The position numbers and the translations under genes are program-made. From Octopus vulgaris (Eukaryota), in NCBI GenBank assembly GCA_951406725.2, contig OX597824.1, positions 75,454,001 to 75,518,000 of the forward strand: 64,000 nucleotides of DNA, read 5' to 3'. A model generated the notes under the pieces. That model was given only the letters and a program-made list of their open reading frames with translations. It made no database searches and had not been told where the DNA came from. Positions 55,270 through 55,750 of this stretch are shown here, piece after piece (the first letter of the stretch is position 1; each line of letters begins with the position of its first letter).

Positions 55270-55750
55270 CTACGGTATTAAGGCATTTTAGTTATTTACC
55301 TTTAAATATGTAAGCATTTCTAACACCCTAATCACATTTAATGACAGTTATAAATCTCATTTTTGGTGAAAAATTGCAAAATGATGTGTATATTAATCTT
55401 ATGTATACTCATTAGCGAATCTCTAAATCATCCATTAATATGGATGACGAAAGCATATATAATAACTGACTAGCAAATCCGAAAAGAGCAGAAATTTCGA
55501 GTCAGTCTTAACTGATGAGGCGACGGAAATTGCCGAAACTGACGTCAGCATTAAGAATTCTCGATCGGCATTTTTCGGACGATTAAGGTCCCTGTTAGTG
55601 TATATATTTACATTGATGTGCATTGACTGCAGCATTAGGGCATTTTAGCTCTTATTTTTAGCAATGTAGGTATTTTTAATGCCTTAGTCACATTTAGTGA
55701 CTGTTATAATTCTCCTTTTGATAAAACATTGCAAACTGCTGTTTATATCA
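55270..55750 (+). mobile_element. Retrozyme-like element: ~356-bp unit in partial tandem, same family as 24453, opposite strand
   Basis: CACATTTA.TGAC.GTTATAA.TCTC recurs at 55333 and 55689; reverse complement ACCTACATTGCTAAAAATAAGA matches ACCTGCATTGGTAGAAATAAGA at ~24481; inverted partial copy at 55115-55160. Confidence 0.6.
55478..55579 (+). ncRNA. Full-length type I hammerhead ribozyme (core 55506-55556) with C instead of U at position 16.1
   Basis: TCTTAA-CTGATGA-GGCGA(CGGAAA)TTGCC-GAAA-CTG(ACGT)CAG-C-A-TTAAGA; stem I extends via TCGAG/CTCGA and TCCGAAAA/TTTTCGGA with internal loops. Confidence 0.8.

What the first reader, a model, noticed from the sequence alone, without database searches (positions are those of the whole stretch)
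55478..55579. Hammerhead ribozyme with an A.C mismatch at 15.1/16.1: candidate A-to-I-editing-gated self-cleaving RNA
Seen: a complete type I hammerhead (6-bp stem I extended by two more helices, CUGAUGA, 5-bp stem II, GAAA, 3-bp stem III). Its only deviation is C at 16.1, giving a GCA triplet and an A15.1.C16.1 mismatch. Established: synthetic hammerheads with inosine at 15.1 switch specificity from NUH to NCH triplets; ADARs favour adenosines opposite C; coleoid cephalopods edit A-to-I very extensively. Inference: editing of A55538 could switch the ribozyme on, linking editing to transcript cleavage or circularisation. The simpler explanation is a single inactivating T-to-C mutation or a sequencing error.
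Basis: partly seen in the sequence, partly recalled or inferred. Interest (0 to 1): 0.8.

Follow-up and report, generated by a model that had tools for sequence, protein, structure and literature searches.

The report
Decayed hammerhead ribozyme in a retrozyme-like repeat
The hammerhead ribozyme is really there, but it is one worn-out copy of a short mobile repeat found hundreds of times in this genome, and its odd C is an ordinary private mutation, so nothing here points to an RNA-editing switch.

Summary
Window 55506-55556 (+) holds a complete type I hammerhead: CUGAUGA, GAAA, three helices and A17, with C instead of U at 16.1 (55549). Chance would give such a motif about 0.004 times per window.

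It is not a unique locus. It is one copy of a dispersed, non-coding, AT-rich repeat of about 300-350 bp (at least 551 candidate copies in the 2.8 Gb genome). The repeat occurs as solo copies, tandem dimers and inverted pairs, usually ending in a TA/TG microsatellite. That is the architecture of animal non-LTR retrozymes and Penelope-type insertions.

The family consensus is a canonical hammerhead with a GUA site. Position 16.1 is T in 92 of 100 copies and C in 5. An unconstrained T nearby shows the same T-to-C rate (6 of 100). The C-bearing copies lie in at least four separate clades. A15.1 is invariant, and no family copy carries G15.1.

The window copy has a single ribozyme, so it could not release a circle even if it were active. 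The editing-gated reading has no support.

A second, intact hammerhead from another repeat family lies at 24588-24633 (-).

The parts
55263..55745 (+). The whole repeat copy: about 1.35 units of a ~345-bp non-coding, AT-rich, hammerhead-bearing repeat (retrozyme-like). It contains one ribozyme.
   Evidence: Similarity to 29 paralogous loci rises from about 55330 and ends at about 55740. An internal direct repeat matches 55263-55410 to 55620-55745. GC is 33-35% against 40% for the window. No ORF of 150 aa or more lies here.
55478..55505 (+). 5' strand of the outer extension of helix I (three short helices separated by bulges)
   Evidence: The fold shows it. The pairs are 86-88% kept across 39 copies, against 30-48% in slid registers.
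55506..55511 (+). Helix I, strand 2.6-2.1 (TCTTAA)
55512..55518 (+). Catalytic core C3-A9 (CTGATGA)
   Evidence: 0-11% non-consensus among 38 paralogues
55519..55534 (+). Helix II (GGCGA/TTGCC, with G10.1-C11.1) and loop 2 (CGGAAA). G55522 is a private A-to-G change that leaves a G.U pair.
55535..55538 (+). Core G12 A13 A14 A15.1 (GAAA). A55538 is the proposed editing site.
   Evidence: A15.1 is A in 100/100 and 38/38 paralogues
55539..55548 (+). Helix III: CTG / loop ACGT / CAG, a 10-nt palindrome. A subfamily has the 12-nt palindrome CTGACGCGTCAG.
55549..55550 (+). C16.1 (family consensus T) and A17. The predicted scissile bond lies between 55550 and 55551.
55551..55579 (+). Helix I strand 1.1-1.6 (TTAAGA) and the 3' strand of the outer extension
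55115..55208 (-). Inverted partial copy of the same unit with an internal deletion. It keeps the 5' flank of helix I and a downstream segment, but lacks the ribozyme core.
   Evidence: BLAST of the unit against the window, inverted repeat I16, sequence read
55202..55226 (.). (TA)n tract between the inverted fragment and the direct copy
55744..55853 (.). (TA)n(TG)n microsatellite abutting the 3' end of the element. The same arrangement occurs in 24 of 30 paralogues.

Best explanation
The site is a dead, solo copy of a hammerhead-bearing, non-autonomous retroelement of the animal non-LTR retrozyme kind.

Shown here:
- The family unit is about 300-350 bp, non-coding and AT-rich.
- Its consensus carries one canonical type I hammerhead (CUGAUGA, GAAA, A15.1-U16.1, GUA site).
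- Copies occur as solos, tandem dimers and inverted pairs next to TA/TG microsatellites.

Inferred from published work on retrozymes and Penelope-like elements:
- Tandem copies are transcribed.
- The ribozymes cut out unit-length RNAs, and a tRNA ligase circularises them.
- A Penelope-like reverse transcriptase/GIY-YIG endonuclease, abundant in this genome, copies the RNA back into DNA.

After insertion each copy decays neutrally. The window copy has accumulated about 10% private changes. One of them is T-to-C at 16.1, which breaks the A15.1-U16.1 pair and most likely abolishes cleavage. With only one ribozyme, this locus could at most cut a read-through transcript once. It could not release a circle.
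For: - Copy number: at least 551 candidate copies. The 39 scored copies other than the window's own locus are 84-94% identical. 174 copies lie within 3 mismatches of the 3' half.
- The consensus is canonical. 16.1 is T in 92/100 and 34/38 copies. Exact-core copies split GUA 34 against GCA 2.
- No enrichment of C: T-to-C at the unconstrained T55530 is 6/100 and at T55552 is 4/100, against 5/100 at 16.1.
- Independent origins: the six C16.1 copies fall in at least four clades of a near-star tree. The median terminal branch is 0.16 and the window copy's is 0.096. The window copy shares no excess of rare derived states with any other C16.1 copy.
- The structure is kept (87.7% of cells paired, against 30-48% in slid registers) but covariation does not exceed shuffles. 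That is what neutral decay from a competent source predicts.
- Architecture: ribozyme-to-ribozyme spacings of 299, 302, 334 and 348 bp in tandem loci; inverted pairs; a microsatellite at the 3' end in 24/30 copies; GC 35%.
- Machinery: at least 5955 GIY-YIG candidates, many in 781-aa open frames with RT plus a C-terminal GIY-YIG domain.
- Literature: type I hammerheads in ~300-bp, low-GC tandem repeats define animal non-LTR retrozymes (PMC7229834). Penelope-like elements show tandem/inverted insertions and a microsatellite bias (PMC8557442). Retrozymes have been proposed as their non-autonomous derivatives (bioRxiv 10.64898/2026.07.22.740005).
Against: - No Rfam hammerhead model reaches threshold, even on canonical copies. 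Membership therefore rests on the manual descriptor and the core residues.
- I found no sequence link between this unit and the flanks of the Penelope-like elements I examined, so the mobilising partner is inferred.
- Nothing was tested for transcription, cleavage or circles.
- C16.1 at 4/38 in the BLAST-selected sample is somewhat above the mean for core positions (3.8%). That sample is small and was selected with a C-bearing query.
Confidence: 0.88

Rival explanations
1. Editing-gated ribozyme: ADAR deaminates A55538 opposite C55549. This creates an I15.1-C16.1 pair that restores cleavage, so editing controls cutting of the host transcript.
For: - The A.C mismatch exists and the rest of the core is intact.
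- From my own knowledge, not re-read here: Ludwig, Blaschke and Sproat 1998 showed that I15.1 changes specificity from NUH to NCH, and ADARs favour A opposite C.
- Synthetic trans-hammerheads have been made editing-state dependent by placing a C opposite the edited base (PMC3923133).
- An inverted fragment upstream (55115-55208) could form dsRNA with 55455-55508 in a read-through transcript.
Against: - C16.1 is a minority state at the neutral rate and arose several times independently.
- In the predicted folds A55538 lies at a junction or in an internal loop, with only 3-4 bp of helix III beside it. It is not in a long duplex.
- The possible duplex with the inverted fragment does not reach 55538 and would unfold helix I.
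- No family copy carries G15.1, which is the footprint expected if edited RNAs were retro-copied. The single genome hit to CGAAGCTGAYGTCAGYA is an unrelated chance 17-mer.
- There is only one ribozyme at the locus, so no circle could form.
Confidence: 0.03
2. C55549 is a sequencing or assembly error and the real copy is a canonical, active hammerhead.
For: It is a single-base difference from the family consensus, and reads could not be inspected.
Against: - The copy shows other private changes as well: 55490, 55494, 55522 and two indels. Its terminal branch is about 0.1.
- The same T-to-C is seen in 4-5% of other copies.
- Error rates in chromosome-scale assemblies are far below 5% (my own knowledge).
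Confidence: 0.04
3. An exapted ribozyme: this particular copy has been recruited by the host, for example for intronic transcript processing, and the A.C mismatch tunes its activity down.
For: The core is better preserved than the flanks in this copy: 2 changes in about 50 nt, against about 10% overall.
Against: - No neighbouring gene was identified. No ORF of 150 aa or more lies between 47247 and 63052.
- The copy is indistinguishable from its neutral paralogues.
- An A15.1.C16.1 mismatch is expected to be strongly inactivating rather than tuning (my own knowledge of hammerhead mutagenesis).
Confidence: 0.02
4. A chance resemblance to the hammerhead consensus.
For: CTGATGA...GAAA alone is expected 1.25 times per window, and Rfam is below threshold.
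Against: The full descriptor is expected 0.004 times per window. The motif is also the best-conserved part of a family of hundreds of copies.
Confidence: 0.005

Closest known systems
Animal non-LTR retrozymes (Cervera and de la Pena 2020, PMC7229834): type I hammerheads in short tandem repeats of cnidarians, mussels, amphibians and others
   Same: - One type I hammerhead per unit of about 300-350 bp.
- Low GC and no coding capacity.
- Dimers and multimers, plus many solo copies.
- A short helix III capped by a palindromic tetraloop.
   Different: - Most copies sampled here are solo or inverted pairs. Long arrays were not seen.
- No RNA evidence.
- The family is not detected by Rfam at threshold.
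- I found no description of a cephalopod family in the searched literature. A count of 235 Rfam hammerhead-1 hits in the giant squid genome is the nearest (PMC6962438).
Penelope-like element pseudo-LTR hammerheads (Cervera and de la Pena 2014, PMC4209133; Craig et al. 2021, PMC8557442)
   Same: - Partial tandem (pseudo-LTR-like) structure.
- An adjacent inverted partial copy.
- Association with microsatellites.
- The genome is rich in EN+ Penelope-like elements.
   Different: - The element has no ORF.
- Its ribozyme has full-size helices, unlike the minimal 1-bp helix III variant described for those elements.
- No sequence similarity to the Penelope-like flanks examined.
Schistosoma Sm-alpha and newt satellite 2 hammerheads (classical type I hammerheads in SINE-like or satellite repeats)
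   Same: Type I topology, an internal loop in helix I facing loop 2, and a repeat-borne, high-copy context. This comparison rests on my own knowledge.
   Different: Unrelated sequence. The tertiary loop-loop contacts were not tested here.
Synthetic I15.1 hammerheads (Ludwig et al. 1998, cited from memory) and editing-state-dependent trans-hammerheads (Fukuda et al., PMC3923133)
   Same: The same chemical logic: an inosine-cytosine pair next to the cleavage site can replace A-U.
   Different: Those are engineered. Here there is no evidence that the A is edited or that the C was selected.

Membership tests
Hammerhead ribozyme, type I | Core C3 U4 G5 A6 N7 G8 A9 | tested here: met
   CTGATGA at 55512-55518
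Hammerhead ribozyme, type I | Core G12 A13 A14 | tested here: met
   GAA at 55535-55537
Hammerhead ribozyme, type I | A15.1-U16.1 base pair (NUH cleavage triplet) | tested here: not met
   The window copy has A55538 opposite C55549, giving a GCA triplet. The pair is A-U in 34 of the 39 copies in the alignment, which includes the window copy. Position 16.1 is T in 92/100 listed copies.
Hammerhead ribozyme, type I | H (not G) at position 17 | tested here: met
   A55550
Hammerhead ribozyme, type I | Three helices around the core, with helix I open-ended and G10.1-C11.1 closing helix II | tested here: met
   Helices of 6, 5 and 3 bp; G55519-C55534
Hammerhead ribozyme, type I | Score above the Rfam gathering threshold for a hammerhead model | tested here: not met
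   No hit at gathering score in the window or in 14 paralogous loci. The best hit is Hammerhead_3 at 33.3 and 30.7 bits against 48.5, through a permuted alignment.
Hammerhead ribozyme, type I | Self-cleavage at the predicted site | not testable with these tools
   Needs in vitro transcription
Animal non-LTR retrozyme | Type I hammerhead in each repeat unit | tested here: met
   Met at family level. The window copy has one mutated ribozyme.
Animal non-LTR retrozyme | Tandem repeats with a 150-450 bp monomer | tested here: inconclusive
   Tandem dimers with 299-348 bp spacing exist. Most sampled loci, including the window (1.35 units), hold a single ribozyme.
Animal non-LTR retrozyme | Low GC (<45-50%), non-coding, no LTR/PBS/PPT | tested here: met
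   GC 33-35%; no ORF of 150 aa or more. PBS and PPT were not searched for explicitly.
Animal non-LTR retrozyme | Expressed as unit-length linear and circular RNAs | not testable with these tools
   No transcriptome access
Animal non-LTR retrozyme | Co-occurrence with, or derivation from, Penelope-like elements | tested here: inconclusive
   EN+ Penelope-like elements are abundant and the insertion architecture matches theirs. No shared sequence was found.
Editing-gated ribozyme (hypothetical class) | C16.1 maintained by selection among paralogues or orthologues | tested here: not met
   5% of copies, the same as neutral T sites, and polyphyletic. Orthologues could not be reached.
Editing-gated ribozyme (hypothetical class) | The target adenosine lies in a duplex long enough for ADAR | tested here: not met
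   Predicted folds place A55538 at a junction or internal loop beside 3-4 bp. This is prediction only.
Editing-gated ribozyme (hypothetical class) | A-to-G mismatches at 55538 in RNA, and cleavage products starting at 55551 | not testable with these tools
   No RNA-seq access

The most novel reading that the evidence does not exclude
In an animal with very heavy A-to-I editing, the 5-10% of copies of this family that have drifted to C16.1, this one included, are occasionally switched back on when A15.1 is deaminated. ADAR activity would then incidentally modulate cleavage of transcripts that run through such copies. This would be a by-product, with no selection behind it.
Probability: 0.03. 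Interest if true: 0.6.

Novelty: new member of a known kind. Interest (0 to 1): 0.15.

Why it matters
On its own the finding matters little. It is a mutated copy of a mobile-element ribozyme of a well-described kind.

Three points may be useful:
- This genome carries at least two hammerhead-bearing repeat families that Rfam thresholds miss, so hammerhead counts from standard annotation will be too low.
- The family is a candidate source of small circular RNAs in this animal and could be tested easily.
- It offers natural A.C (15.1/16.1) variants for anyone who wants to test inosine rescue of hammerheads in a heavily editing species.

Tried and rejected
- **Rfam.** I ran it at gathering score on the window and on 14 paralogous loci, and at E<=10 on 3.5 kb. 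There was no hammerhead hit.
- **Type III reading.** The only sub-threshold hit is Hammerhead_3. It pairs upstream GUCAGU (55501-06) with ACUGAC (55538-43), giving a canonical A15.1-U16.1 and a GUC site. It leaves only UUAA where helix I should be, so I rejected it as a working ribozyme.
- **TRF.** It reported no tandem array at the locus. The 1.35-unit structure appeared only by pairwise alignment.
- **Autonomous partner.** I scanned 20 GIY-YIG loci and three 10-kb loci around 781-aa Penelope-like ORFs for the unit and for hammerhead cores. There was no similarity. One locus (L058, 5945-6400) has ~100-bp tandem repeats with a UUGAUGA...GAAAC motif, which I did not pursue. ORFs next to paralogues L018 and L005 gave no Pfam hit.
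- **Shared descent of C16.1.** A test between the window copy and L003 found 3 shared rare states, against a mean of 2.2 for all pairs. No support.
- **Retro-copied edited RNAs (G15.1).** One genome hit, shown to be an unrelated 17-mer.
- **Covariation test of the helices.** No excess over shuffles.
- **First descriptor script.** It missed the site because the palindromic helix III left no loop. The corrected script is.
- **Organism.** Not verified. The assembly is 2.8 Gb in 227 contigs.

Full report
**What is in the sequence.**
- TCTTAA (55506-11) pairs with TTAAGA (55551-56) as helix I.
- CTGATGA (55512-18) is C3-A9.
- GGCGA/TTGCC (55519-23 / 55530-34) is helix II, with loop CGGAAA.
- GAAA (55535-38) is G12-A15.1.
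- CTG-ACGT-CAG (55539-48) is helix III and forms a 10-nt palindrome.
- C55549 is 16.1 and A55550 is 17.

The only core defect is the A15.1.C16.1 mismatch. The outer part of 55478-55579 folds into three further short helices that prolong helix I (-34.9 kcal/mol, z = -3.95). The energy model prefers CUGAUG/CGUCAG pairing inside the core. That is usual for hammerheads, whose active fold is tertiary.

A descriptor scan of my own, with 16.1 left free, finds this site. It finds 0.004 hits per window in 500 Markov randomisations. The bare CTGATGA...GAAA pattern is uninformative (1.25 expected).

**Rfam.** No hammerhead model reaches its gathering score on the window or on 14 paralogous loci that include canonical copies. 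Nothing appears at E<=10 in a 3.5-kb scan. On a 141-nt slice the best hit is Hammerhead_3 at 33.3 bits (threshold 48.5). It uses a permuted alignment in which upstream GUCAGU pairs with ACUGAC and helix I is reduced to UUAA. The same happens on a canonical paralogue. I do not regard that reading as a working ribozyme. Family membership therefore rests on the defining residues and helices.

**It is a repeat.** A search of the window's own genome (2.8 Gb, 227 contigs) with the 102 nt gives 551 candidates. The 39 scored matches other than the window's own locus are 84-94% identical and lie on many chromosomes.
- A pattern for the 3' half with 16.1 left free finds 174 copies within three mismatches.
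- Alignment of 40 copies gives a canonical consensus: CUGAUGA, GAAA, A15.1-U16.1, GUA.
- Position 16.1 is T 92, C 5, A 2, G 1 among the 100 listed copies, and T 34, C 4 among 38 BLAST-selected copies.
- Copies with an exact core and helix III split 34 GUA to 2 GCA, and the window copy is one of the two.
- T-to-C at T55530, which has no catalytic role, is 6/100, and at T55552 it is 4/100. C at 16.1 is therefore not enriched.
- Other essential positions decay similarly (G12 is changed in 9/100 copies). A15.1 is A in all 138 copies examined.

**Independent origins.** A maximum-likelihood tree of about 400 bp from 40 copies is nearly a star. The median terminal branch is 0.16 and the window copy's is 0.096.
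- The six C16.1 copies (L001, L003, L007, L009-inverted, L026, L034) fall in at least four separate groups, three of them inside well-supported clades.
- The window copy and L003, weakly joined in the tree, share 3 rare derived states. The mean over all pairs is 2.2 and the 95th percentile is 6.
- Across 39 copies the hammerhead pairs are kept in 87.7% of cells, against 30-48% in slid registers. Covariation does not exceed column shuffles.

All of this fits copies that came from a competent source and then decayed without constraint.

**What the element is.**
- Similarity among copies spans about window 55330-55740 and stops at a TA/TG microsatellite.
- Inside the window copy, 55263-55410 repeats 55620-55745. 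The copy is therefore about 1.35 units of ~345 bp with a single ribozyme.
- Just upstream lies an inverted fragment of the same unit with the ribozyme core deleted (55115-55208), followed by a (TA)n tract.
- Elsewhere the family forms tandem dimers with ribozymes 299-348 bp apart, and head-to-head inverted pairs.
- 24 of 30 copies have a dinucleotide microsatellite 185-300 nt downstream of the core.
- The unit is 35% GC and has no ORF.

These are the published features of animal non-LTR retrozymes: type I hammerhead, ~300-bp low-GC repeats, dimers to multimers (PMC7229834). They also match Penelope-type insertions: partial tandems, an adjacent inverted truncated copy and a microsatellite bias (PMC8557442). 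A 2026 preprint argues that the former derive from the latter.

The genome holds at least 5955 GIY-YIG candidates. Many lie in 781-aa open frames that combine RT with a C-terminal GIY-YIG domain. I found no sequence shared between those elements and this unit, so the partner is inferred.

**The editing hypothesis.** The chemistry is sound. I15.1-C16.1 hammerheads cleave NCH sites (Ludwig et al. 1998, from memory), and engineered editing-dependent hammerheads exist (PMC3923133). The locus itself gives the idea no support.
- C16.1 is a neutral minority state.
- Predicted folds put A55538 at a junction, not in a long duplex.
- The one nearby source of long dsRNA, the inverted fragment, does not reach 55538 and would unfold helix I.
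- No family copy has G15.1, the footprint expected if edited RNAs were reverse-transcribed. The sole genome match to CGAAGCTGAYGTCAGYA is an unrelated 17-mer.
- With one ribozyme the locus cannot make a circle.

Actual editing and cleavage remain untested for lack of RNA data.

**Seen in passing.** The descriptor scan found a second complete type I hammerhead on the minus strand: C3 at 24627, A17 at 24588, canonical U16.1, helices of 6, 4 and 4 bp. It belongs to another dispersed family (109 candidates, 76-91% identity, also with inverted pairs). That family's consensus keeps the core, and many copies have lost G12 through CpG decay. Rfam scores it at 14.9 bits.

**Verdict.** The object is a decayed member of a known kind of ribozyme-bearing mobile repeat. 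The editing-gated reading is not supported. I rate the interest as low.

Noticed in passing
window 24583-24641, minus strand (C3 24627, A17 24588): A second complete type I hammerhead with an intact core and canonical U16.1 (AUA site; helices of 6, 4 and 4 bp). It belongs to a different dispersed repeat family (109 candidates, 76-91% identity, some in inverted pairs). That family's consensus keeps the core. Rfam scores it at only 14.9 bits.
   Followed up: partly
window 9433-14370 and 17943-22148, minus strand: Two non-LTR (LINE-type) retrotransposon copies. Each has ORFs with zinc-knuckle, AP-endonuclease (Exo_endo_phos) and reverse-transcriptase domains.
   Followed up: partly
window 192-2074: A tandem array of a 185-bp unit: 10.1 copies, 96% matches. 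The unit contains a GGTTCAAATTCC-like stretch reminiscent of a tRNA T-arm, so it may derive from a SINE.
   Followed up: no
window 26575-26646, minus strand: A tRNA-like sequence, the only Rfam hit at gathering score in the window (39.4 bits). It has several mismatches in the acceptor stem, so it may be a tRNA-derived repeat or a pseudogene.
   Followed up: no
window 63094-63696: A 30-bp minisatellite: 20 copies, 95% matches.
   Followed up: no
L058 5945-6400 (G000:C17:42766444-42766899), just downstream of a 781-aa Penelope-like ORF: Five tandem ~100-bp repeats, each with a hammerhead-like UUGAUGA...CGAAAC...GGUC motif that has U instead of C at position 3. They may be degenerate or variant Penelope pseudo-LTR ribozymes.
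   Followed up: no
G000 genome-wide; e.g. L056 3245-5587: Very abundant canonical EN+ Penelope-like elements. There are at least 5955 GIY-YIG candidates, and many 781-aa frames are open with RT plus a C-terminal GIY-YIG domain, which suggests recent activity.
   Followed up: partly
family alignment A2, columns 71-82 (window 55539-55548): One subfamily carries a CG insertion in helix III (CTGACGCGTCAG) that keeps the segment perfectly palindromic. This fits a requirement for a palindromic helix III, as in double-hammerhead dimers.
   Followed up: no
G000:C11:30961301, 31000351, 31086950, 31133102: Four copies within 170 kb share the same inactivating G12-to-C change (GCCCAAAC). They probably spread by segmental duplication and not by transposition.
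   Followed up: no
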